Counted from the stretch's first letter, positions 31,647 to 44,264 are shown. The stretch: 64,000 bases of DNA from Cyanophora paradoxa CCMP329 (GCA_004431415.1 QPMI01000453.1:248001-312000); one strand, 5' to 3'. Numbers and translations are program-made. The notes: generated from the letters alone by a model not told the origin.

Positions 31647-34600
31647 ATGGAGGCCGCAGCGCCTCTGAACGTCATGGTACGCGCACCTGTTCGCTATGGC
31701 ACCGGCTTCTCAGTGTTGAGACTCTGCGCAGGTGCCTGACTGCAAGCTTGAGAGGACAAACTCCGTCCCGCCCTCGCCGGCGCCCCTCCGGTCTTTCGCC
31801 GAGCTGCGAGAGCCAGTTCGTAAGTTCCTGCCCGGACGCCGCAGGAACGCTTCTGTGCTAGGCTCTAGATGCGCTCCTTGGGCCATACGCCGGCCGGCCG
31901 GGCCGGCAACGGGAGAACATAACCGCGCGCTTATCAACGTTCCACCTGTCCTGTCGCGCGCACCTCATTCCGTCGTCGGGGCGCAGCGGAAGGCAGTCCA
32001 AAGAGCCCGCGGAGGAAGATTTTCACTCCGCAAGCCTGCGATCTGGACTCGCGCTTCACCCAGTTCGACCTCATCACCCCCGGTCCGCGCCGCGCCCAGC
32101 CGGCCTCTATCCCTTCCGCGCCTTACCCAGCGCAGACGGGAAGATCCAGGAGATTAAGCGCATCTCCCAGACGGAGGCGCGGCTCGTCATCCGCATCGAG
32201 AACATTGCGCCGTTCTTCGTCGGCTATCAAATCAGCGAGCGCCAGCTGCAGTTCAACAGCCGGGCGACTATCGCACAGCTAGGAGTGAACATAGTCGGCG
32301 ATGACATCATTCTGGAGCCGGGGAATGCCACCGTTCGCGTGCGCGCGAGCCCGCCCCATCTGGATTCGGGAAGATGCGGGCTCACCGCGCTCGCAGGCGC
32401 GCGCGATAGCCCTCAACCCGCTGGGCGTGCGGCTCTTGGATCAGCTTCAGGTAGCGGATTCTTCCTTTGCGCTTTCTTTTCTCCCTTCTTGAACGCGCCT
32501 GGCAGCCGGGGGCCATCGTCGGCAAGCTCTTCGCGGCGGACGACCGGCGCCGCGTGCGGCACTCGGTGTACCTGACGCGCATGGCGAACCGCACGGACCG
32601 CTACGGCCGCCCGCTCCTGAAGTTCGGCTGTGCGCCCGCGCCGCCGCGCCACGCCGCGCCGCGCCGCGCTTCCCGCCCGCCTGGCTGACCGACCGCCTGG
32701 CCGCCTGGCGCAGCGGACGCGACGGGGATGAAGGACGTGCGGTTCGAGGAGATCAACGGGCGCCTGATCGCCCACGTGCAGCTCGTCCCGGGCCGCGTCG
32801 AGTGCGCGCGCCGCCGGCCCGCCGGCCCGCCCGGCCTCGGACGGACGGGCGGACGGAAGGCTAAACAGACAGCCGCCGGCAGTTTCGAAGAGGACGTGGA
32901 GGGACTCCTTCCGACCGTCGTGAAGGCGTTCACCGCCGGGCGCACCATCCGAGACACGCTGGCCCTCCACCAGGTCCGAGACTGGTCTTCTGAGCTATGG
33001 AAGCCGCCCGCCGCCCCTGCTAAGTAAGGGTCGCAGCGGATCGTGGAGGGCCCGCGGAGGCCGCAGCAGGAGGCCCCCTTCGACCAGCGGGAGGGCCTCG
33101 TCATCGTCAAGACGCGGCGCATCTACCTCCGCACCGTCTTCGCCCGAGTCGCCGCCGACATGCTCCCGGAGGGGTACGCCTGCACTTCGGCCAACGTGAT
33201 GGAGCCTGACATGAACGACGTCTCCGCCCTCTACGAGCTCGTGGCGAAGCCGGGCGGCGCGCCCGGCGAGATCTCCTCGGTGCCCCTCGAGTTCTTCACG
33301 CTGGAGGCGTACCGCGAGCACGTGCACTTCGGCGATCGGGACCAGCTCCAGGTGCTCCTGGAGCGGCCCGAGGTCCTCTTCGACGCGATGCGGACGGCCC
33401 CCGCGCCCCGCGACTCCTGCGCCGCCGTCTACATCGTCAAGGGCCACCAGCTGCTGGACCTGACACCCGACGACTGGGTCACCCGCAACCCGACTCGGCG
33501 GGACTTCCCCGGCCTCGCCTCGCCGCAGCAGCAGGCCGAGGCCATCGACGAGTACATCCGCGCGCAGGCCGAGTACCCCTTCCTCAAGCAGATCGACCAG
33601 CACTACATCACGTCCCAGGGGGTACTCATCTCCCGCTACTTTCCCTCCCCGTGCCTCAAGGGCATGCTCCTCAACGACAACGTGCGCCGTACCCCCCCCT
33701 TTCCACCCCTACCCCTGTTCCTGCGCCGGGCTCTGCGGCGGCCGGCGCGAGGCCCGCCGCGCCGCTCTTTCCTCCCGGCCGAGATTTCACCCCCTACCCT
33801 TACCCCTGCCCTCAACTACCCCCCCTCCCCCAAACTAACCTGTACCCCCCTCTTCCCGCAGGTGCGGTGGTGCCTGAAGGGCGTCTACTTCGAGACGCCC
33901 TCGCGCGGCAACGGCGAGTTCTTCAGCCAGGAGGACCGCGCGCTGATGATCGACCTCGCAAAGTTCGGCGTACCCGTCTACCGCCTCGACACGACCACGA
34001 ACACCATCCTCCAGTTCGTCCACAAGGTGATTTTTTGGTTCCTTTCTATGTGATTCTATGTGTCTCTATCTTATATTCTGCAGGCCGGCAAGGACAGCGG
34101 CATGTTCGTGCCCAGCCACCGCGTGGACCACTTCATGCGGGCTACGCTCTTCGGAGTCTACGGTTCTAACCTGGTCGAGGGCGATTTCGAGGGCGAGCTG
34201 CGCCGGCTCCTCCTGGGAGTGCTGGACCTGAAGGGCCGGACCGCGCACCCGCTCCTGAATCCCGACACCCCCCTGGCGCTCCTGACGGGCGGCGGGCCCG
34301 GCGCGATGGCCGTGGGCAACCGCGTGGCGAAGAGCGTCGGGATCCTCTCCTGCGCCAACATATGCGACTTCTCGCCCAAGACGCCCGGCGTGGTCGTCAA
34401 CGAGCAGAAGATCAACCCCGACATCGAGGCCAAGGTTCTCTCGGATCAGATCTGATCTCACCTGATCTCTACCTGATCTGAGTCAGATGAGCTTCCGGCT
34501 GGAGAAGCTTGTGGAGCGGCAGGCCGAGTTCAACCTCGACTTCCCCATCTTCCTCGTCGGCGGCGTCGGCACCGACTTCGAGTACGCCCTCGAGGAGGTC

Positions 34601-35126
34601 CGCAGGAAGGTGAGCAAATGTCTATCTATCTATCTTTCGATGGCGAACTTTGCTTTCATCGTCCTTTAAAGGCTTTGCTTTCGGCAATATAACGCGCGCT
34701 TCCCTCTCGGCAGGTGGGTACGACGCCGGCGCACCCCGTGCTCCTCTTCGGGCCCGTCGAGTTCTGGCGCGACAAGGTGGGGCTTTCTCCCCCTTCCCCG
34801 CTACCTTTTAATCTCGTACCCATGCTTCGCGGGCTCTTCTTCTTCCTCGCAGCTGCGGGGCAAGTTCCAGGCGAACCTCGCGTCGGGCACCATCAAGGGC
34901 TCCGAGGTGCGCTCGCCGCTCCTCGTCGAAGAGTAGTACCCCCTGTATCGATCGCTCAAACTGACTCGGCCTCGCTCGGCAGTGGCTCTCGAACTGCTTC
35001 TTCCAGATCACGACGGCCGAGGAGGGCCTCAAGGTCTTCGAGCGCTTCTTCTCGGGCGAGCTCGCCATCGGCAAGGGCGGGCCCGTCTACGACGACGGCT
35101 TCTGCATCGTCTCCCAGTGCCTCTAG
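31647..35126 (+). CDS. Long LOG/SLOG-family nucleotide monophosphate nucleosidase-like protein, Chlamydiae-type (~700+ aa), intron-containing
   Basis: Spliced product: FDLITPDGKIQEIKR..., VGKLFAADDRRRVR, PLEFFTLEAYREH, ITSQGVLISRYFPSP, LFGVYGSN, LLTGGGPGAMAVGNRVAK, LVERQAEF, FLVGGVGTDFEYALEE (LOG PGGxGTxxE variant); TAG at 35124-35126. 5' micro-exons are tentative. Confidence 0.82.
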
Positions 35127-37271: not shown

Positions 37272-40200
37272 TCAGGCGGCGGCGCGGGTGGTCGGGACCC
37301 GGGCCAGCTCTGCGCAGCAAGGTCGAGCTCAGATGCGTTGGGCGGAACGGATGCGGCGGCCCGCGCGCACCGGCCGGGGCGGCGCGAGCCGCGCAAGGCT
37401 GAACGGTGCCCGCGGCGGCGAGCGCTTTCAGGCCGGCGGAGGCGGCGGAGGCGGCGGCGAGGGCGTCGGAGAGGGCGCGGGCGTCGTCGCCGGCCGCCGC
37501 GAGCTCGGCCTCCGCCGCCGCGGCGCGCCCCGCGGCGGCGGCGAGCAGGGCGCGGAGGGCGGGGAGGGCGGCCCCGCGCACGGCCGCCCGGCAGGCGTCG
37601 AGGACGGCCCCCGAGGCGAGGGTGGCGAGGAGCGCCCCGCGGCACTTCGCGCGGGCCGCGTCAAAGGGGGGGGAAGACGAGGTCGGGCCGGCCGCGGGCG
37701 CCGGAAAGGCGGCGAGCAGCACGGCGCGGCGGTCGACGGCAAAGGCCTCCCTTTGGAGCTGCACGACCTCGTTCTTCATGATCGGCACCTCCCGGACCTT
37801 CTTCACCGGCACAAACCGCTGCTCCGTCACGTACTGCGTCACCTGCGGCGGGCGTCGGCACAGGGAGAGGGCCAGGATGAGGGCTGATCGAGGGCGGGGG
37901 CGGCGGGTCGGACCTGGCGGGTCTTCGGCTCGTACTCGACGCGCTGCGTGGTGTAGTGGTACCGGTCGCGCGGCCCTACAATCCAGTAGCGGCGGCCTTC
38001 GCCGTACGCAACGTGTTTCTCGGTGATGGTTTTCGGCTCTGCCCGGTCGAGTGAGCGATGCCACGAGCACCGCGGCCCGCGAGTGCGCACCGTTGTACGT
38101 CTCCGTGACCAGCCGAGGCACCTGGACGTCCTGCAGCTCCATCGCTTCGTACTCCTCGGGGGCCGTGCCCGGCACCTGCTGGACGACCGACTCCTGCCAC
38201 TCGCGCCGCGAGGGCGGCACAAGCTCGCCCCACGCGACGTGCGGGGGCAGGCCAGCCTTCGCCGCCTCCGACGCCAGCGCCTTCGCGACTGGGGCGCAGT
38301 CCGGCGCGCCCACCGCGGGGGCTTCCACGCCGACGCGGGCGGCCAGCGCGGCGACGGCCGCGCGCTGGGCCTCCGCGGCTGGCCCGCGAGGTGCTCGGCG
38401 AGCGAGGCGGCGAGCACGGCGGCCGAGCGCCGGAACTCGTCGGCCGCGTACGCGTCGGCGACGCGCCGGAGGGCGAGCTGGCGTGCGGTCGCCGCCTCCT
38501 CGCGCCCGCCCTCCCCGCCGCAGGCCGCGTCGGCCTCGGCGCAGGCCGCGTCGAAGCGGGCAACGGCCTCGGCGGAGGCGAGCAGCGCGCGGGCGGGGGC
38601 CCGCAGATCTTCGGCGCCGCTCACGAGGGCGGCCGCCGCGTTGATTACGGCGTTCAGCCACCCGCGCGCTGGGCCGTCGAGCAGCGCCCGGCGCGCCTCG
38701 TCTGACGCCAGCGCGGCCACAGCGGCGCCGCCCTCGACGGCTGCGCAGGGCTCGGACGCAGGGCGAGCAGGGCACGCGAGGCGCTGCGCACCGGCAATGG
38801 CGGCGTCGACCGCTTCGCGCGCCTCGCGAGCGGCCCGCGCGCCCTCCTCGGCGGTTTCCTTCTTCCCAAGAAGCGCCAGCAGCAGCTCCTGTCCCGCCTG
38901 CGGCGCGCGGCGCGCGCGTCAGCACGGCGCGCGGCGACGACGAGGATCGAGGGCGAGGGGAGCGCACCCGCACGGCGCGATCGAGGGCGCTGGTAAGCTG
39001 GTCGGCGCACGAGGCGACGAGCTCGGCCTCCGAGGCGAGGTAGAGGGCCCGCACGCGCCGCTCGACCTCCGCCTGCCCGCTCTGCCCCTCCGGCGTTCAG
39101 AGGCAGACGGAGGAAAGCGGGAGGGGGGGGCTGGCCTCCTCCATGGCGGCCCGCACGACCGCGTCGAGGTCGGCCTGGGGGAGGGAGGCCCAGTTGGGCC
39201 CGAGGCGGGGCCCGAAGAGGCGGGCCTTCTCCTCCGCCGAGGCCCGCCCCAGCTGCACCAGGCGCGTCTGCAGCGCGAGCCGCGCGCTGAAGGGCAGGAT
39301 GCACTCCTCGGGTACGTCGAGCTGCGGGGGCCCTCAGCGGGCCCCGTGTACAGGCGCGCCTCAGCGAGAGCGCGCACCGTGGCGTCGGAGAGTTTCTGGC
39401 GCAGGTACGCCGGTGCGTCCTTGGGATTGATGCTTCGCCCGTCGGACTCGTCGAAGAGGTCCACCTTGTTAAGCAGGACGAGGAGGCGGGGCAAGCTGGC
39501 GCCGGGCTCGTAGCGGAAGAGGTCGGGGCGGTCGGCGCGGCGCTTGAGCATCGCCTCGATCGCCTCCTTCTCGTTCATCTTCGTGTACTCGAGCACCTGC
39601 GCTGGGATGAGCGCGGCGCCGCGCTAGCTATATAGGGGAGGCCGCACGAAGATTTGGAAGTTGGCAGCCTTGCCGATCCGGTCTGCGAGCTCGATGAAGA
39701 GGTCGGCCCCATTCTCCCCGCCGCCAGTGAGGTCCTCCAGACAGAATCGCGGCCTGTCGGAGTCACCGCCGTCGAGGCCTTCCATTACGGGCAGCGCAAC
39801 TTCCAGAGAGAGCCGCCCTGCGGCACGGGGGGCTGCGCGTGAGGTGAAAGACGAGGGTGAAGCAGCTAAAGCAGGCCGCACCGGCATACGTGAGCGCGAG
39901 GGCATGATCGGCACGGGCGGCGTCGTTCAGCTGCTCCAGCCGCAGTCGAATTGCGTGAACTCCTTCAACTATCTCGGCGTCGCCCGTAAGCGGCAAGATG
40001 CGAAGACGTCCCTCCGGTGAGGCCTTGGGCGAGTGCACGACAGTGATCGGCACAGCCGTCTCTGGCTGGGCCGCGCTGAACCGGAAGGCAAGTCAGCTCG
40101 CGCTGGGAGGCGAGCAGGGCGGCCTGCATGCGCACTACGGCTGGAAGGTGTTGCCTGCGAATCCGTTGATAACTGTCGACTTGCCCGCCTTCAAGCGCCC

Positions 40201-40407
40201 GTCGAGGCTGAGAGAGAACTCGAAGTCGGCCACGGCTTTGCCGACGTTGATAGACGCTTCCAGCGCAAGCTCCGCATCAGTTCGGAGGCTGCACGCCAGG
40301 ATGTCGATTCGCGGGCGAATGCTCGCATTCTTCAGGGCGGCCGCAGCTTCGTTTGCCTTGCGAGCGAATCCGGCAAGATTGCCGAGCGACGCGTTAGCGG
40401 AAGGCAT
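37272..40407 (-). CDS. Dynamin-like GTPase A (bacterial DLP/mitofusin-type Dynamin_N domain, helical stalk, beta-hairpin insert)
   Basis: G1 GRLKAGKST (~40190); G2 QPETA; G3 EDLTG; G4 LLNKVD (~39470); G5 PFSARLAL. One apparent 1-nt frameshift near 38378. Stop is either 37272 (with a terminal intron) or 37252. Confidence 0.8.
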
Positions 40408-40660
40408 GACCGCGCGCTGCACTGCAATGCGAGCCGCGCTGCGCTGCGCTTTAACGCGGCCATCTTGGAGGTCAGTTGATGCGTGCCACGCCCTGTACCC
40501 CCAAAGGTCTGTTGATCTCGGTCACTTGTCCCACTGGGCCCAGCGGCGTCAGTTGATCTTTCGAGCCCAGAGATGGCAGTTGTCCCAGCGGCGTCAGTTG
40601 ACTACTCTTCCCGCACCTTCCTGGAGCGCGAGCCGCCAGATCTAGACACAAGAAAGCGCG
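40408..40660. promoter_or_regulatory. Bidirectional promoter shared by the two dynamin-like genes, with repeated CAGTTG elements
   Basis: 253 bp between divergent ATGs; exact 18-bp direct repeat cccagcggcgtcagttga at 40539 and 40584; CAGTTG at 40473, 40550, 40577, 40595 and CTGTTG at 40509. Confidence 0.6.
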
Positions 40661-41492
40661 ATGCCGATCTACGCTAAGCTCGTCGAACCAGCGCGCAGCG
40701 TCCAGCATGCAGCCGCTCGAGCGCAGCACGCAGCGAGCACGCGGAAGTTCTGTGTCGGGGAAACCCTCGACGCGAAGGCCGGCGCTCTCGACGCGGCCTG
40801 CAAAGATGTAATTCTAATCGTAGTCGATCTCGTCAAAGATCTCGGTCCGCCGTGCCCGCCACGCGCCTTGTGCGTCTGGGCGGCAGTCTGAATATGCGCC
40901 AGTGGATGGCGTATTCCACATCGCCCTGTCTGGTCGCGTTAAAGCAGGCAAGTCTGCAGCAGTCAACGCATGCATTGGGCGCCGCGTGCAGCCGTCGTGC
41001 GTGCCTGGCTCTTGCACGACTGAAGCGCGGGCTGACCGCGCGCGCGAGCCTCGCTTTCAGGTCGAACCAGCCGCAGACCGCGTTCCCGGTATCATTCGTG
41101 CACAGCAAGGCCATTCGGCTCATCGGCCTGGACGCATCAGCAGCCACGGCGGCCGCGGTCGAGCAGGCGCTCGCGGAGGCTAACAAGGCGGCGCGCGAGA
41201 ATGCCGGCATGCGCGCCACCTACGCCGGTGCGTTCGACTCCGAGCGCCTGGGATGTGAAGCCTGAGCTCCCCGCTCCGGCACGCAGCGCGGCGCATCGCC
41301 GTGGAGGTCCCGATGCTGGCCCTCGAGAACCTCTCCCTGGGGGACGACGCCACCGGGACGCTCGATATCAAGGACCTCTCCGGCTTCGGCGAGTTCGGCG
41401 CGGCGGGAGACGGCTTCACGCAGATGGCCATCGAAAAGCTGAAGCGCGCCGCGCTCCACGTCCACGTTGCCGACTACGGAAAGGTTCCCCCT

Positions 41493-41529
<37 letters not shown>

Positions 41530-43852
41530 GCGCCGCGCGCCCAGCGAACGCGGCCCCCGCGGCAGATGAACGAGAAGGAGGACTTCGACATCCTGCGCGA
41601 CGTGAAGAAGCACCGCCCGGACCTCCGCACCATCGTCCTCCTGAACAAGGCCCGCCCGCCCGCCCCCGCCCCCCCCGCCGCGCTAGCGACCCGCTCTCGC
41701 TGACGGCGCCGGCCACAGATCGACCAGTACGACGAGTGCGAGCCGCGGAGCGTGAAGCCCGAGGACGCGCCTCGCTTCTACTGCGAGTGCGCCGCCAAGG
41801 CAGGGGTCCGCCGCCCTGTCCGTCGCCGATCGCGGTTGCTCACGGCCCTGTCGCATGCGCAAACAGGTCCAGATCGCGGTGGGGGACGTGTTCCCTGTCA
41901 GCGCGAAGCACGCTCTGCTGGCGCGGCTGGAGCTGTCGGGGGCCGCAACCCCGGCGGACCGCAACGCACTCTTCGGCGCCCTGTGGCCCCACGTCGCCCC
42001 CGAGCTCCTCGCCCAGATCGCCACCGAGAAGCTCGAAAAGGTGCGCCGCCGCCACGTCCGCCCGCACGCTCGCCCCCTCCCGCCCCCGCCGAGCCGCCGG
42101 CCGCGCAGTCGCTCTTCCCGCGCTTCGAGGGACGCCTGCGGGAGCTCTTCCTGCGCCACGCCCCCGAGCTCGCCGCCGCCGCCGCCCGCCAGCTCCGCGC
42201 AACCCTCGCCCGGCTCTCCCGGGTGCGACCCCGCGCCGCTGCCGCCGCCCGCCGCCCGCCGCCGGCCGAGCCCCGCCCCGCCCCGCCCGCGCAGCTGCTC
42301 GGGACTTTGCGGGCGCCCTGGAGGAGGCCGCGGCGGCCGCGGACCGCGAGCGGGAGCGGAGCCAGGCCGCCCTCGAGGCCGTCCTCGCGGCCCTCGGCGC
42401 CGCCGGCCGGGGAGAGGGGGTCGTCGGCTTCCGGGCCGATCCCTTCCTGCGGGGCTTCTGGGCATCCAGGGGCGAGGCCCTCGCCCGCCCCGCCGCCGCC
42501 GCCGCCGCCGTGGCCCTCCTCTCGCACTCCGACGCCGACCGCGCCGCCGCCCGCGCGGCCCTCGGCGACGCCGGCGGCCGGATCGCTCGCTTCGACGTGG
42601 CGTGCGAAGAAGCCGACCGGCGCGGCGGCGCCGGCGAGGAGGCGGACACGGAGGCCGAGGCGGCGGAGCGGCGGGCGGCGCTCTGGGCGGCGGCCAAGAA
42701 GTACCTCGCGGAGGAGCTGGCGGCCTCCGCGCGCCTCGTCGGCGAGCACGCGCGCGCCGCCCTCGAGGCGCCCGCCGGCCTCGAGGGGCTCCCAGAGGGC
42801 CTCGCCGAGCTAGCCCGCCGCGTCGGCGCGCCCGCCCCCCGCCCCCCTCTCCGCCGAGGCCGCCCGCCGCCCCGCCAGCGAGCTGCCCGCCGCCCTCGCC
42901 GCCGCCGCCGCCGGCAAGCTCGCCGCCGCCCTCGCCGGGCTCCCGGTGGCCCTCCCCGCCGGCGGGCTGGAGCGGATCAGCCGGCCGGCGCCCCGCATGG
43001 AGAAGCAGGAGCAGCAGGTGCCGGAGGCGTACGAGGACGTGGAGCACTACACGGTGCAGGAGCAGCGCACGCGCAAGAAGAAGGTCCAGGGTGCGCCGGC
43101 CGCGCCGCCTCTCTCCTCTCTCTAATCCATCGGCAGTCCCGCGCATCAGGACGGAGCGCAGGGTGGTCCACCCCGGGGGCGGCGGCGACGGCGGGGCGGC
43201 GGCGGCTGGGGCGGCGGCGATCCCGGCCGTCGCGGCGATCAACCCGGTGGCGGGCGTCTTGACCGCAGGCTTCCTCGCCCTCGCCGGTGGCGCCAGCCGC
43301 GAGCCCATCGAGATCGACGTACCCGTCGTCTACTACGAGGAAGATGAGGAGGACGTGAGCACCCTCACTCACGCTCCCTCACTCACTGACTCACTCACGC
43401 ACGTACCCCGCCCCGCCCCCGGGCAGGAGACGTACTGGGAGCCCGTACCCGCGACGCGGCCCAAGCGCGACGTGCGTCTCGTAGGGCGGCTCGTCGACGT
43501 GGCGGTGGAGGGCGAGGCGATGACCTGGCGCGTCGACCGGCCCGCCCTCGCCGAGGCGCTCCGCCCCCAGCTCCTCGCCGCCGCCGGCGCGGCGCTCGCC
43601 GTTTTGAAGGAGGCCGCCCTCGCGCCGCCCGTCCGCGACTGGGCGCACGCAGCCGCGGCCGCCGCCGCGGCGCCGGCGCTGGAGCGGCTGCGCGCCGCGG
43701 CCGCCGCGCGGGCGGAGGAGGGCGCGGCGGCGAGTCGGGCGGCGGCGGAGGACGTGGCGGCGCTGCGGGAGGCGAGGGCCGCCCTCCGCGAGGCCGAGGC
43801 GGAGGTCGAGGCCGGCTCCCGCCTCGCCGGCGTCCCCGCCCGCGAGCCCTAG
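40661..43852 (+). CDS. Dynamin-like GTPase B, paralog of A, with hydrophobic-tipped beta-hairpin insert
   Basis: G1 GRVKAGKSA (~40940); G2 QPQTA; G3 KDLSG; G4 LLNK|ID; G5 PVSAKHAL. KMNEKE and ARFDxACxEAD motifs are shared with A. Apparent frameshift in the C-run at ~42835-42848. TAG at 43850-43852. Confidence 0.8.
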
Positions 43853-44264
43853 CTGTAGGCTGTAGAGCCCCGATGTACAGCGTCTGTGTCGTGTATTTGA
43901 AAACACTTAAAGCTTGTGATGTCGACTAAAGGCCTAGGGACCTAGATCTAGATTTAATTTCTAGTAGAGCCGCCGGCCGGCCCTTGTTTTGGATCCGGAG
44001 CGCAATCTTCCCCGCCGCCGCCTCCCGAAGTCCGCCGCCGCCCCGAGCCGTACGCGTCGACTTCGAATTCATGATCAATGCGACTTCCTGCGCTCCGGCC
44101 GGGCTCCCGCTAGCTATAAAGCGCTAAGCTGGCAAAAATAGATCAGCGAATTCGAATTCCCATCTTGATCTTGAACAGCCACTTTTTTGGAGCGTGCTTT
44201 CTCTTTCATTTACAAATATGTAGTACGTGCACTTGCGGGGCCCCGGAAGGCCCTCGACCGGCGG

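What the first reader, a model, noticed from the sequence alone, without database searches (positions are those of the whole stretch)
37272..43852. Head-to-head pair of bacterial-dynamin-like GTPase paralogs in an alga: candidate two-component membrane remodelling or defence system
Seen: two divergently transcribed genes 253 bp apart, each with complete G1-G5 motifs (GRLKAGKST/GRVKAGKSA, PETA/PQTA, DLTG/DLSG, NKVD/NKID, SARLAL/SAKHAL). They share private motifs (KMNEKE, RS..P.DAP, ARFDxACxEAD), so they are diverged paralogs. They are not classical eukaryotic dynamins: no DLPG motif, and I recognise no GED or PH domain. Known: bacterial DLPs often occur as adjacent pairs acting as hetero-oligomers in membrane fusion or repair, and some (B. 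subtilis DynA) limit phage spread. Inference: a co-regulated eukaryotic heterodimeric DLP module for membrane repair or anti-virus/anti-parasite defence. I know of no description of such a pair in this lineage.
Basis: partly seen in the sequence, partly recalled or inferred. Interest (0 to 1): 0.85.

Follow-up and report, generated by a model that had tools for sequence, protein, structure and literature searches.

The report
Paired bacterial-type dynamin GTPases in Cyanophora
The glaucophyte alga Cyanophora paradoxa carries two back-to-back, spliced and transcribed genes for bacterial-type dynamin-like GTPases, one with a greasy membrane-inserting tip and one without; they belong to a family of about a dozen copies seen only in this alga, and their job is untested.

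Summary
Gene A (37272-40407, minus) and gene B (40661-43852, plus) are divergent, intron-bearing paralogs with start codons 253 bp apart. Each has intact G1-G5 motifs and the shared private motifs. Spliced RNA contigs from three samples in two studies cover both genes.

The organism is Cyanophora paradoxa. Gene A is EukProt tig00020710_g13309; I found no database protein for gene B.

A profile search, an AlphaFold model (G domain pLDDT above 90) and structure searches place the family in the mitofusin/BDLP branch of the dynamin superfamily. It is not an ortholog of mitofusin, BDLP/FZL, CrfC, LeoA/BC or DynA.

Cyanophora has about 12 such units, mostly adjacent by gene number. In four pairings, one member has an uncharged Gly/Ala-rich tip (B type) and the other a basic, aromatic beta-rich tip (A type).

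All Cyanophora copies form one clade (99/96). A and B share three intron positions, so the pair arose inside the eukaryote and was not inherited as a bacterial operon. The nearest bacterial relatives are single genes. Some are fused to TIR and lie among immune-type genes.

I rate it a new variant of a known kind, of moderate interest.

The parts
37272..40407 (-). Gene A (A type), EukProt tig00020710_g13309, 830-aa model P0001. Intron-containing dynamin-like GTPase with N-terminal helices, a G domain, a long helical trunk, a basic/aromatic beta-rich tip and C-terminal helices.
   Evidence: P0001 maps exon by exon onto the window. A spliced RNA contig removes 40076-40135. AF2 model mb9583d060c08 has G-domain pLDDT above 90. 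Foldseek and VIA-align put mitofusin, Fzo1, IniA, SynDLP and BDLP on top.
40174..40200 (-). Gene A P-loop (G1, GRLKAGKST). The other A motifs are G2 at 40054-40068, G3 at 39720-39740, G4 at 39459-39476 and G5 at 39271-39294.
   Evidence: Frame translations and motif coordinates. G, K, S/T, T, D..G and NK.D are nearly invariant across 100 relatives.
37971..38003 (-). Turn of the gene A tip (GEGRRYWIVGP). It is basic and aromatic and has no long uncharged stretch. It lies inside a predicted long beta hairpin of low confidence.
   Evidence: The hydropathy scan finds no uncharged 19-mer in P0001. The A-type tip alignment A5 includes g14163. AF2 pLDDT is below 55 here.
38327..38432 (-). Assembly indel and false intron. 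RNA contigs read straight through and carry one extra G after 38380. The public model splices out about 53 nt here instead.
   Evidence: read-laying table 4 and contigs 38268-38529 in runs X1 and X2. P0001 shows an 18-residue gap exactly here against all five paralogs.
40408..40660 (.). Shared 253-bp region between the start codons. Transcript contigs of A reach 40483 and those of B start at 40568, leaving at most 84 bp untranscribed, so this is a candidate bidirectional promoter.
   Evidence: Contig pieces in table 8.
40471..40601 (+). Four same-strand copies of GTCWGTTGA at 40471, 40507, 40548 and 40593, spaced 36-45 bp. Two copies sit inside an identical 17-mer. This is a candidate shared cis-element.
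   Evidence: These are the only 4 matches in the 64-kb window, against 0.33 expected and 0 of 100 shuffles reaching 4. Repeat families D2 and D3. The 17-mer occurs only here.
40661..43852 (+). Gene B (B type). Intron-containing dynamin-like GTPase paralog, not found in the protein databases searched. The first exons are 40661-40844, 40903-40996, 41061-41227, 41287-41483, 41566-41649, 41719-41805 and 41867-42038. Later exons run to the stop at 43850-43852.
   Evidence: Frame translations. Spliced contigs confirm the junctions 40844|40903, 40996|41061, 41227|41287, 41483|41566 and 43354|43427, and the exon 41867-42038. tblastn and exon-wise blastp place it nearest the B-type paralogs P0005 and P0006. 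The joined coding sequence was not assembled.
40932..40958 (+). Gene B P-loop (G1, GRVKAGKSA). The other B motifs are G2 at 41068-41082, G3 at 41367-41387, G4 split across 41635-41649 and 41719-41736, and G5 at 41894-41917.
41650..41718 (+). Inferred 69-nt GC-AG intron that splits the G4 motif (NK|ID) of gene B.
   Evidence: An RNA contig exon ends at 41649. The sequence reads AAG|GCCCGC ... CACAG|ATCGAC. The junction itself was not seen in a listed contig.
43190..43297 (+). Gene B tip: 36 consecutive uncharged Gly/Ala-rich hydrophobic residues flanked by charged residues, with an NPVAG motif. This is a candidate membrane-inserting segment.
   Evidence: Translation. The aligned B-type tips of P0005, P0006 and P0008 show the same feature.

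Best explanation
The locus holds two paralogous nuclear genes of Cyanophora paradoxa for large GTPases of the mitofusin/BDLP branch of the dynamin superfamily.

The family probably entered the lineage by gene transfer from bacteria. It then gained introns and duplicated into two types. The A type has a basic, aromatic, beta-rich tip. The B type has an uncharged Gly/Ala-rich hydrophobic tip. The A/B pair was then copied as a unit, giving about 12 units on three contigs.

In this window the pair is transcribed divergently from a shared region of at most 84 bp that carries four copies of a 9-mer found nowhere else in the window.

Inferred mechanism: B sits in a membrane through its hydrophobic tip. 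A reaches the membrane peripherally or through B. GTP-dependent pairing of G domains and assembly of the helical trunks then tether, fuse, repair or constrict membrane, as in mitofusins and bacterial DLP pairs.

Shown here: anatomy, transcription, splicing, fold class, family expansion and origin by duplication within the eukaryote. Inferred: A-B contact, membrane binding, and which membrane and process are served.
For: Identity and anatomy.

Transcription and splicing of both genes in 4 runs (3 samples, 2 studies).

Fold class:
- Dynamin_N passes its threshold in paralogs P0002 (35.7 bits) and P0005 (38.5 bits).
- The family profile's best PDB hit is Nostoc BDLP at 8.6e-7.
- The AF2 model has pLDDT 74 overall and above 90 in the G domain.
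- Foldseek gives MFN2 3e-11, IniA 4e-11 and BDLP 1.7e-9.
- VIA-align gives mini-MFN1 Z 25.7 over 368 residues spanning model residues 1-808, so the N- and C-terminal helices pack into one bundle beside the G domain.

Family and pairs.

Tip asymmetry in four pairings.

Duplication inside the eukaryote:
- The Cyanophora copies form one clade at 99/96, window A joins the A types at 97/85, and the B clade has 100/100.
- Three G-domain introns of A and B lie in homologous codons in the same phase.
- The nearest bacterial relatives are single genes.

Shared promoter motif.
Against: - No direct evidence shows that A and B touch; the complex prediction was not folded.
- Only contigs were available, so expression levels and co-regulation could not be measured.
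- The tip regions of the model have low confidence (pLDDT below 55), so the hairpin arm and membrane insertion rest mainly on sequence composition.
- The orientation of the other pairs is unknown, because their DNA could not be fetched.
- Other first-stage notes report head-to-head GTPase pairs of other families in this genome (unchecked), so the arrangement may be a general habit of the genome.
- Window gene A alone falls under the Pfam Dynamin_N threshold (23.5 against 27 bits).
- Gene B's assignment to the B type rests on exon-wise scores and the tip. It is not on a tree.
Confidence: 0.55

Rival explanations
1. The pair is an immune module. It would be a eukaryotic descendant of bacterial conflict-system dynamin-like GTPases, expanded in tandem under pressure from viruses or parasites. 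It would seal or remodel membranes at infection sites, in the way DynA, Mx or GBP proteins act.
For: - The closest bacterial subfamily includes DLP-TIR fusions (P0015 from Pyxidicoccus, L007 from Corallococcus). These lie next to NACHT or STAND-TPR-TIR, patatin, ThsB-like TIR and CHAT genes.
- P0012 lies near a KAP NTPase.
- There are weak LeoBC/LeoA (Eleos) matches.
- The family is a lineage-specific tandem expansion to about 12 units, with gene conversion and degenerate copies.
- A weak PIN-like stretch lies between the B and A units of g9940.
- DynA limits phage spread (PMC8844932).
Against: - The Cyanophora proteins carry no TIR or other effector domain.
- No data on induction are available.
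- The defence context was seen only for the myxobacterial subset. Other relatives sit beside ordinary genes such as an ABC exporter, UvrD and enoyl-CoA hydratase.
- No viral relatives were found.
- This reading is compatible with the best explanation. It adds a purpose that is untested.
Confidence: 0.22
2. The two genes are independent paralogs. The head-to-head layout is just the footprint of an inverted tandem duplication in a compact genome. Each protein works as a homo-oligomer, and the tip difference reflects different target membranes.
For: - Dynamin-family proteins commonly act as homo-oligomers.
- The nearest bacterial relatives work from single genes.
- Other head-to-head GTPase pairs are noted in this genome (unchecked).
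- The g9940 model implies that at least one B-to-A arrangement is co-directional, not divergent.
Against: - One hydrophobic-tip and one basic-tip member recur together at four pairings. This holds even in g14162/g14163, where the N-terminal halves have been homogenised to about 90% identity but the tips stay different.
- The A/B split is older than the split between the loci, so the pair was kept together through duplication.
- The intergenic region is very short and rich in a shared motif.
Confidence: 0.25
3. They are organelle-dynamics factors: the glaucophyte counterparts of mitofusin or FZL, or a replacement for the missing DRP5B in dividing the cyanelle outer envelope.
For: The top structural matches are mitofusins and Fzo1. 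The Cyanophora genome paper reports no drp5B and suggests an alternative mechanism for outer-envelope division (PMC6704402).
Against: - Sequence relation to mitofusin is negligible (E about 0.06). To BDLP, the FZL-type protein, it is only 8.6e-7 over 55 residues.
- The bacterial sister profile also hits BDLP only at 5e-13 over about 100 residues.
- The tree places the family beside bacterial single-gene DLPs.
- There is no room for a transit peptide, because the N-terminal residues form a modelled helix of the neck bundle.
- A dozen fast-diverging copies in a single species is unusual for a core organelle factor.
- No closer relative was found elsewhere.
Confidence: 0.08

Closest known systems
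Mitofusin 1/2 and yeast Fzo1 (PDB 5yew, 6jfm, 9kfd)
   Same: These are the best structural matches. The G domain plus a first helical bundle built from N-terminal, post-G and C-terminal helices aligns at Z 25.7, rmsd 5.0 over 368 residues, and Foldseek gives E 3e-11. Like mitofusins, one partner has a hydrophobic segment in the distal part. Mitofusins also work as isoform pairs (PMC6104087).
   Different: Sequence relation is negligible (E about 0.06). Nothing suggests mitochondrial targeting. The phylogenetic neighbours are bacterial. The long beta-rich tip insert is absent from mitofusins.
Nostoc punctiforme BDLP (PDB 2j68/2j69), the cyanobacterial relative of plant FZL
   Same: It is the best PDB match by sequence profile (8.6e-7). 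It shares the P-loop to switch I signature G..K.GKS..N...G...P....P.TA. The architecture is the same, with a G domain, neck and trunk helices and a membrane-binding tip.
   Different: The match covers only about 55 residues. Even the bacterial sister profile reaches only 5e-13 over about 100 residues, so this is a different subfamily. BDLP is one protein with a paddle. Here the tip has split into two types carried by two genes.
Campylobacter jejuni DLP1/DLP2 and other operon-paired bacterial DLPs (PDB 5owv; PMC6104087)
   Same: Two adjacent, diverged DLP paralogs are expressed together. The structures match (E 3e-8 to 1e-7, Z about 18). Heterotypic tethering is the working model proposed here.
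   Different: The Cyanophora pair arose by duplication inside the eukaryote, so the pairing is convergent. The genes are divergent with introns, not an operon. No A-B complex has been shown.
Bacterial single-gene DLP subfamily of about 700-880 aa in Myxococcota, Bacteroidota and Binatia, unnamed, including DLP-TIR fusions such as WP_164009902.1
   Same: These are the nearest sequence relatives (E 1e-39 to 1e-30 over G domain plus first helices). They share DYTK...E, NK.D and SA..AL motifs. They are the sister group in trees.
   Different: They are single genes with no hydrophobic tip and no introns. Some carry a C-terminal TIR domain, which the Cyanophora proteins lack. Identity to P0001 is only 17-24%.
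Bacillus subtilis DynA, Eleos (LeoA/LeoBC) and E. coli CrfC
   Same: All are bacterial dynamin-like GTPases. Matches are weak: CrfC 21-47 bits, LeoBC E 2.8e-7 in P0002, and DynA 18.5 bits. DynA and Eleos show that this class can act in defence (PMC8844932; bioRxiv 10.1101/2022.12.12.520048).
   Different: All scores lie far below the family cut-offs (for example 21 against 1146 bits for CrfC). P0001 has no PADLOC hit at all. The window shows no two-headed fusion.

Membership tests
Dynamin superfamily | Intact GTP-binding motifs G1 (GxxxxGKS/T), G2 (Thr), G3 (DxxG) and G4 (N/TKxD) | tested here: met
   Both genes carry all four. The same positions are nearly invariant across 100 relatives.
Dynamin superfamily | Pfam Dynamin_N (PF00350) at its gathering score of 27 bits | tested here: inconclusive
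   Window gene A (P0001) scores 23.5 bits, below the cut-off. Paralogs pass: P0002 35.7, P0005 38.5 and P0007 77.5 bits. Gene B was tested only exon by exon and scored weakly.
Dynamin superfamily | Large G domain joined to a helical bundle formed by N- and C-terminal helices | tested here: met
   AF2 model with G-domain pLDDT above 90. The best Foldseek matches listed (ranks 1-50) are all dynamin-superfamily proteins, with probability 1.00. VIA-align Z is 17-26 and the alignments span residues 1-808.
Dynamin superfamily | Assembly-stimulated GTP hydrolysis and membrane remodelling | not testable with these tools
   This needs purified protein.
Classical eukaryotic dynamins / DRPs | Dynamin_M middle domain and GED, with or without a PH domain | tested here: not met
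   Pfam finds none of them in P0001 or its paralogs. Classical dynamins rank below the mitofusin/BDLP group in structure searches.
Mitofusin / Fzo1 orthologs | Significant sequence similarity and grouping with eukaryotic mitofusins | tested here: not met
   Profile against PDB gives E about 0.06. The nearest relatives are bacterial.
BDLP / FZL family | Full-length sequence similarity to Nostoc BDLP | tested here: not met
   The match is 8.6e-7 over 55 residues. The sister-group profile reaches 5e-13 over about 100 residues. FZL sequences themselves were not available for comparison.
BDLP / FZL family | Membrane-binding paddle or transmembrane segment at the distal tip | tested here: inconclusive
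   Gene B has 36 uncharged hydrophobic residues at 43190-43297. Gene A has none. The model is of low confidence here.
Operon-type bacterial DLP1/DLP2 pair | Two adjacent diverged DLP genes expressed together | tested here: met
Operon-type bacterial DLP1/DLP2 pair | The two partners descend from an ancestral bacterial pair | tested here: not met
   The Cyanophora A and B units form one clade at 99/96. They share intron positions. The nearest bacterial relatives are single genes.
Operon-type bacterial DLP1/DLP2 pair | Heterotypic complex of the two partners | not testable with these tools
Eleos (LeoA + LeoBC) defence system | Matches to the PADLOC LeoA and LeoBC models over most of their length | tested here: not met
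   P0001 has no hit. P0002 hits LeoBC at 2.8e-7 over 78 residues only.
CrfC / DynA | NCBIfam equivalog score at the cut-off | tested here: not met
   CrfC scores 21-47 bits against a cut-off of 1146. DynA scores 18.5 against 1600.

The most novel reading that the evidence does not exclude
A eukaryotic two-component dynamin immune or membrane-repair module of bacterial descent. The ancestor would be a conflict-island DLP, with relatives still fused to TIR. After transfer into the Cyanophora lineage it would have split into an anchor (B, hydrophobic tip) and a peripheral partner (A, basic beta-hairpin tip). The pair would then have been amplified as a unit, under a shared motif-driven bidirectional promoter, to guard membranes against viruses or other attackers.
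Probability: 0.2. Interest if true: 0.8.

Novelty: new variant of a known kind. Interest (0 to 1): 0.58.

Why it matters
Broad surveys of eukaryotic dynamins have set aside the mitofusin/BDLP branch (PMC10280142). Apart from mitofusins and FZL, its members in eukaryotes have had little attention.

This family is intron-bearing and transcribed, and has expanded in a glaucophyte. It appears to have re-invented the two-partner design that bacteria encode in operons, with the membrane-binding tip divided between two genes. The tip difference is kept even where gene conversion has erased other differences.

This gives a natural system for asking what each half of a heterotypic dynamin pair contributes. 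It also links a eukaryotic gene family to bacterial relatives that sit in immune-type neighbourhoods.

Practical points for annotators: gene B appears to be missing from public protein sets, and gene A's public model carries an artefactual intron caused by an assembly indel.

Tried and rejected
- Pfam on single exon translations gave only weak P-loop hits.
- phmmer of P0001 against PDB found nothing.
- I searched for gene B's protein using a stop-free ORF that contains its C-terminal exons. This found nothing. No retrieved protein matches gene B at 60% identity or more, so its database protein, if one exists, was not found.
- The look-up of encoding contigs for the paralog P0005 returned no record. 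The DNA and orientation of the other Cyanophora pairs therefore could not be read.
- The first AF2 model, from a 6-sequence alignment, was too poor to use (pLDDT 60.6). It was replaced by the model from the 100-sequence alignment.
- The first two tree runs, with the mixture model on 77 rows and 709 columns, did not finish. They were replaced by trimmed data sets.
- Complex prediction on the G-domain halves of the adjacent paralogs g9935 (A type) and g9936 (B type) was not folded, for a policy reason. There is no verdict.
- Scans of viral contigs and JGI metagenome contigs with family-specific peptide patterns found no relatives.
- The search of earlier findings by sequence was blank.
- Many short joints in the GC-rich, low-complexity stretch 42081-43750 in read laying have 20-24-nt sides and non-splice ends. 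I treated them as repeat artefacts.
- Contamination by bacterial DNA is rejected, because the genes have spliced introns and the GC content of the host genome.
- Gene B's joined coding sequence was deliberately never assembled, searched or folded. It was handled exon by exon, by reference.
- PMC10681802 could not be read.

Full report
**What is in the window**

The region is GC-rich (0.67-0.78) and the genes have introns. Reading three frames on each strand shows two divergent genes.

Gene A runs on the minus strand from the ATG at 40407 to the stop at 37272-37274. Gene B runs on the plus strand from the ATG at 40661 to the stop at 43850-43852. Exactly 253 bp separate the two start codons.

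These are the G1-G5 motifs in both genes, together with KMNEKE, RS..P.DAP and ARFD.AC.EAD.

**Identity of the genes and the organism**

A stop-free ORF that contains real C-terminal exons of gene A retrieved one protein, P0001 (830 aa, EukProt tig00020710_g13309.t1). Its pieces map onto the window exon by exon. The EukProt accessions name the organism as Cyanophora paradoxa. This fits the 67.6% GC, intron-rich PacBio/Canu assembly described in PMC6704402.

The same approach for gene B found nothing. Gene B therefore appears to be absent or badly modelled in public protein sets.

Every comparison of gene B was made exon by exon, by reference or on separately translated exons.

**Transcription and gene structure**

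Logan contigs from four runs (three samples, two studies) were laid on 37900-43880. The runs are only guessed to be RNA. However, several contigs lack introns exactly at splice-site boundaries, so they derive from RNA.

- Gene A: one contig joins 40136 to 40075, a 60-nt GT-AG intron. Another has an exon that ends at 39136, just before a GC donor.
- Gene B: the contigs fit the junctions 40844|40903, 40996|41061, 41227|41287, 41483|41566 and 43354|43427, and the exon 41867-42038 (coordinates refined).
- The NK|ID motif of gene B is split by an inferred GC-AG intron at 41650-41718. The exon end at 41649 was seen; the junction itself was not.
- Some contigs are unspliced, for example 43200-43629, so intron retention or pre-mRNA is present as well.

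Both genes are covered in all four runs. Depth from contigs cannot rank expression, so co-regulation is not shown quantitatively.

**An assembly error in gene A**

RNA contigs in runs X1 and X2 read straight through 38268-38529 and carry one extra G after 38380. The public model instead removes about 53 nt there as an intron. In the paralog alignment, P0001 shows an 18-residue gap at exactly that place. The window therefore has a 1-nt deletion, and the public model is wrong by 18 residues.

**The shared intergenic region**

Gene A contigs reach 40483 and gene B contigs begin at 40568. At most 84 bp separate the observed transcript ends.

The 9-mer GTCWGTTGA occurs four times in the 64-kb window. 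All four copies are on the same strand, at 40471, 40507, 40548 and 40593. The expected number is 0.33, and none of 100 shuffles reached four. Two copies lie inside an identical 17-mer that is found nowhere else in the window. This looks like a compact bidirectional promoter with a repeated binding site. I have not tested that.

**What kind of protein**

Sequence evidence:
- P0001 alone is a weak Dynamin_N match (23.5 bits against a cut-off of 27), and phmmer finds nothing in PDB.
- Five paralogs from the same species gave alignment A1. Dynamin_N passes its cut-off in P0002 and P0005.
- The A1 profile's best PDB match is Nostoc BDLP (8.6e-7 over the P-loop to switch I stretch). Mitofusin, Fzo1 and Campylobacter DLP1/2 score near 0.06.
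- A profile search of 1.84 billion representative proteins gave 2762 hits at E of 0.001 or better. Beyond the Cyanophora copies, the best are proteins of about 700-870 aa at 1e-39 to 1e-30. They align over the G domain and the first helices.
- The language-model atlas also points to bacterial "dynamin family protein" clusters.

Structure evidence:
- With 100 of these sequences as the alignment, AlphaFold2 gave a usable model. Mean pLDDT is 74 and pTM is 0.61. The G domain is above 90, the helical trunk is 65-89 and the tip is below 55.
- Foldseek against PDB returns only dynamin-superfamily proteins at the top: MFN2 3e-11, IniA 4e-11, BDLP 1.7e-9, then SynDLP, Fzo1, Campylobacter DLP1/2, and then dynamin and Mx.
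- VIA-align gives mini-mitofusin 1 a Z of 25.7 (rmsd 5.0, 368 residues) with the alignment spanning model residues 1-808. The N-terminal helices, the G domain and the C-terminal helix therefore form the same G-domain-plus-bundle unit.

Named families that do not fit:
- CrfC, DynA, LeoA and LeoBC match weakly and far below their cut-offs.
- The profile of the bacterial sister group hits BDLP only at 5e-13 over about 100 residues.

The family belongs to the mitofusin/BDLP branch by fold. It is a separate subfamily and not an ortholog of any named member.

**The family in Cyanophora**

Retrieved units:

| Contig | Gene | Type or content |
|---|---|---|
| tig00020710 | g13309 | window gene A |
| tig00020710 | unannotated | window gene B |
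| tig00020510 | g9933 | A type, with an internal duplication |
| tig00020510 | g9934 | B type |
| tig00020510 | g9935 | A type |
| tig00020510 | g9936 | B type |
| tig00020510 | g9939 | 194-aa fragment |
| tig00020510 | g9940 | 2424-aa model: a B unit, about 830 aa with a sub-threshold PIN-like hit, then an A unit |
| tig00020510 | g9941 | A type |
| tig00020816 | g14162 | hydrophobic (B-like) tip |
| tig00020816 | g14163 | basic (A-like) tip |

Adjacency is inferred from gene numbers. The DNA could not be fetched, so orientations are unknown.

**Two tip types that stay paired**

B-type proteins (P0005, P0006, P0008) and window gene B (43190-43297) have a run of uncharged Gly/Ala-rich hydrophobic residues at the distal tip. 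In gene B the run is 36 residues long, and an N/D-P-V motif is shared with P0005 and P0006. A-type proteins (P0001, P0002, P0004, P0009) have charged, beta-rich tips with a basic, aromatic turn instead. The sampled bacterial relatives have no such hydrophobic run.

The g14162/g14163 pair is telling. Their first 388 residues are about 90% identical, which is consistent with gene conversion. Their C-terminal halves are only 44% identical, and one keeps the hydrophobic tip while the other keeps the basic tip. The difference in tip type has been kept even though the rest of the two genes has been made alike.

The B unit inside g9940 has a degenerate tip. P0009 lacks the stretch that holds G3 in its model. 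Either may be decay or an error in the gene model.

**Origin of the pair**

The careful tree used LG+C20+F+G4, 39 rows and 422 columns, rooted on distant DLPs. It gives:
- all ten Cyanophora units as one clade (99/96);
- the B types as one clade (100/100);
- window gene A as sister to the A types of tig00020510 (97/85);
- A types plus B types together (96/92);
- g14162/g14163 outside these.

The quick tree of 61 rows agrees on the single Cyanophora clade.

Window gene B could not be placed on a tree without joining its exons. Exon by exon, its two most informative G-domain exons score 49-51 and 40-41 bits against B types. Against the other units they score 18-31 bits for the first exon and at most 34 bits (16-34, with no hit in g14163) for the second. 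It also carries the B-type tip.

Three of the G-domain introns lie in homologous codons and in the same phase in A and B:
- after QP, phase 2;
- after TYA, phase 1;
- before LDVPEE in A and VQIAVG in B, phase 0.

A and B therefore duplicated after introns had been gained, inside a eukaryotic genome. The A/B split is older than the split between the window locus and the tig00020510 cluster, so the pair was copied as a unit.

**The bacterial relatives**

The nearest subfamily comes from Saprospiraceae and other Bacteroidota, Corallococcus and Pyxidicoccus (Myxococcota), Binatia, and many metagenome contigs. In each locus read, it is a single DLP gene with no second DLP within 6 kb. More distant DLPs in the same scan are often paired or tripled.

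Two myxobacterial members are DLP-TIR fusions:
- In Pyxidicoccus the gene lies among NACHT, patatin, ThsB-like TIR, DUF4062 and TIR-HEAT genes.
- In Corallococcus the next gene encodes a TIR-STAND-TPR protein.
- A further Myxococcota locus has a CHAT-TPR neighbour.

Other loci have ordinary neighbours. This is circumstantial support for a conflict role in part of the sister group, and nothing more.

Eukaryotic members of the bacterial-side clade also exist. One is an intron-containing single gene in the green alga Micractinium. Another is a transcript from the euglenid Ploeotia. Transfer into eukaryotes may therefore have happened more than once. The direction of transfer is inferred from the breadth of the bacterial group and is not proven.

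No relatives were found in viral contigs. No closer relatives were found in JGI metagenome contigs.

**How it most likely works**

Shown:
- two intact GTPase genes of the mitofusin/BDLP fold class;
- both spliced and transcribed;
- a very short motif-rich region shared between them;
- a conserved pairing of a hydrophobic-tip member with a basic-tip member.

Inferred from what is known of mitofusins, BDLP and Campylobacter DLP1/DLP2 (PMC2862293, PMC6104087, PMC6162298): B is held in a bilayer by its tip. A binds peripherally or through B. GTP-dependent G-domain pairing and trunk assembly then tether, fuse, repair or constrict membranes.

No cleavable targeting peptide is apparent, because the N-terminus is a modelled helix of the neck bundle. 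A cytosolic protein acting on some membrane surface is therefore most likely. Which membrane it acts on is unknown.

Defence is a plausible purpose, given the expanded, fast-diverging, partly decayed family, the bacterial relatives in immune-type neighbourhoods and the precedents of DynA, Eleos and Mx. I put it at about one in five. A role in organelle dynamics, for example standing in for the missing DRP5B (PMC6704402), is possible but poorly supported.

**What is known already**

- The Cyanophora genome paper mentions only a DRP5A-type dynamin.
- Two broad surveys of eukaryotic dynamins do not mention Cyanophora or glaucophytes. One of them explicitly leaves out the mitofusin/BDLP branch.
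- A preprint reports 415 co-located Eleos-like hits in 317 eukaryotic genomes without describing this family. Paired dynamin-like genes in eukaryotes are therefore not unheard of.
- I found no description of this family in the papers searched.

**Limits**

- No expression levels were available.
- The tip structure is of low confidence.
- Neither the orientation nor the DNA of the other pairs was seen.
- Gene B was analysed only exon by exon.
- Other first-stage notes list head-to-head pairs of other GTPase families in this genome (unchecked). The layout alone is therefore weak evidence of joint function.

**Verdict**

This is a new variant of a known kind: a eukaryotic, lineage-specific, pair-forming subfamily of bacterial-type dynamin-like GTPases. 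Interest is moderate.

Noticed in passing
window 38327-38432 (indel after 38380): The assembly lacks one G that RNA contigs carry. The public AUGUSTUS model g13309 hides the frameshift with a false intron of about 53 nt and so loses 18 residues that all paralogs have.
   Followed up: yes
window 39135 (gene A, minus strand) and 41650 (gene B): Two introns seem to use GC rather than GT donors. The gene A exon end at 39136 is seen in an RNA contig. The gene B intron at 41650-41718 splits the G4 motif NK|ID and is inferred.
   Followed up: partly
window 40471-40601: GTCWGTTGA occurs four times on the same strand, 36-45 bp apart, and only between the two genes (0.33 expected per window). Read on the other strand its core is CAACNG, which recalls Myb-type sites from memory. 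I did not test that.
   Followed up: partly
window 40661-43852: Gene B has no counterpart among the database proteins retrieved, although it is spliced and transcribed. It is probably unannotated or badly modelled in the public Cyanophora proteome.
   Followed up: partly
P0007 (tig00020510_g9940), residues 775-1608: This 2424-aa model strings together a B unit, about 830 residues with a sub-threshold PIN_11 match (23.7 bits) and an A unit. It is either a merged gene model or a real two-headed fusion like DynA.
   Followed up: no
P0008 / P0009 (tig00020816_g14162 / g14163): The N-terminal 388 residues are about 90% identical while the C-terminal halves are 44% identical, which suggests gene conversion limited to the G-domain half. 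The P0009 model lacks the stretch that holds the G3 DxxG motif.
   Followed up: partly
L002 8001-10598 (Pyxidicoccus trucidator); L007 5854-8487 (Corallococcus carmarthensis): These are bacterial dynamin-like GTPases fused to a C-terminal TIR domain. Their neighbours include NACHT, patatin, ThsB-like TIR, DUF4062 and TIR-STAND-TPR genes. This may be an undescribed defence-gene architecture.
   Followed up: partly
L083 10001-15642 (Micractinium sp. CCAP 211/92, KAL4419401.1): A green alga carries a single, intron-containing member of the bacterial-side clade. It groups with a Logan protein (P0022) and away from the Cyanophora clade, which suggests a separate acquisition.
   Followed up: partly
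L084 1-1788 and 8001-10092 (metagenome contig of 883 kb, GC 0.41): Two dynamin-like genes lie in divergent orientation about 6 kb apart. One of them appears split into two ORFs. One (P0044) is the long-branch neighbour of the Cyanophora clade, with weak support (84/51).
   Followed up: no
window 43200-43629 and 43072-43354: Some RNA-run contigs keep introns that other contigs splice out. This points to intron retention, pre-mRNA or a little DNA in the libraries.
   Followed up: no
window 42081-43750: GC-rich, low-complexity coding sequence with GCC-type repeats draws many short false joints and loose ends from unrelated contigs. The depth figures here are inflated.
   Followed up: no
window 31647-35126: Another first-stage note flags the neighbouring gene as a Chlamydiae-type LOG/SLOG protein. 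If that is right, a second bacterial-derived gene lies about 2 kb from gene A's 3' end.
   Followed up: no
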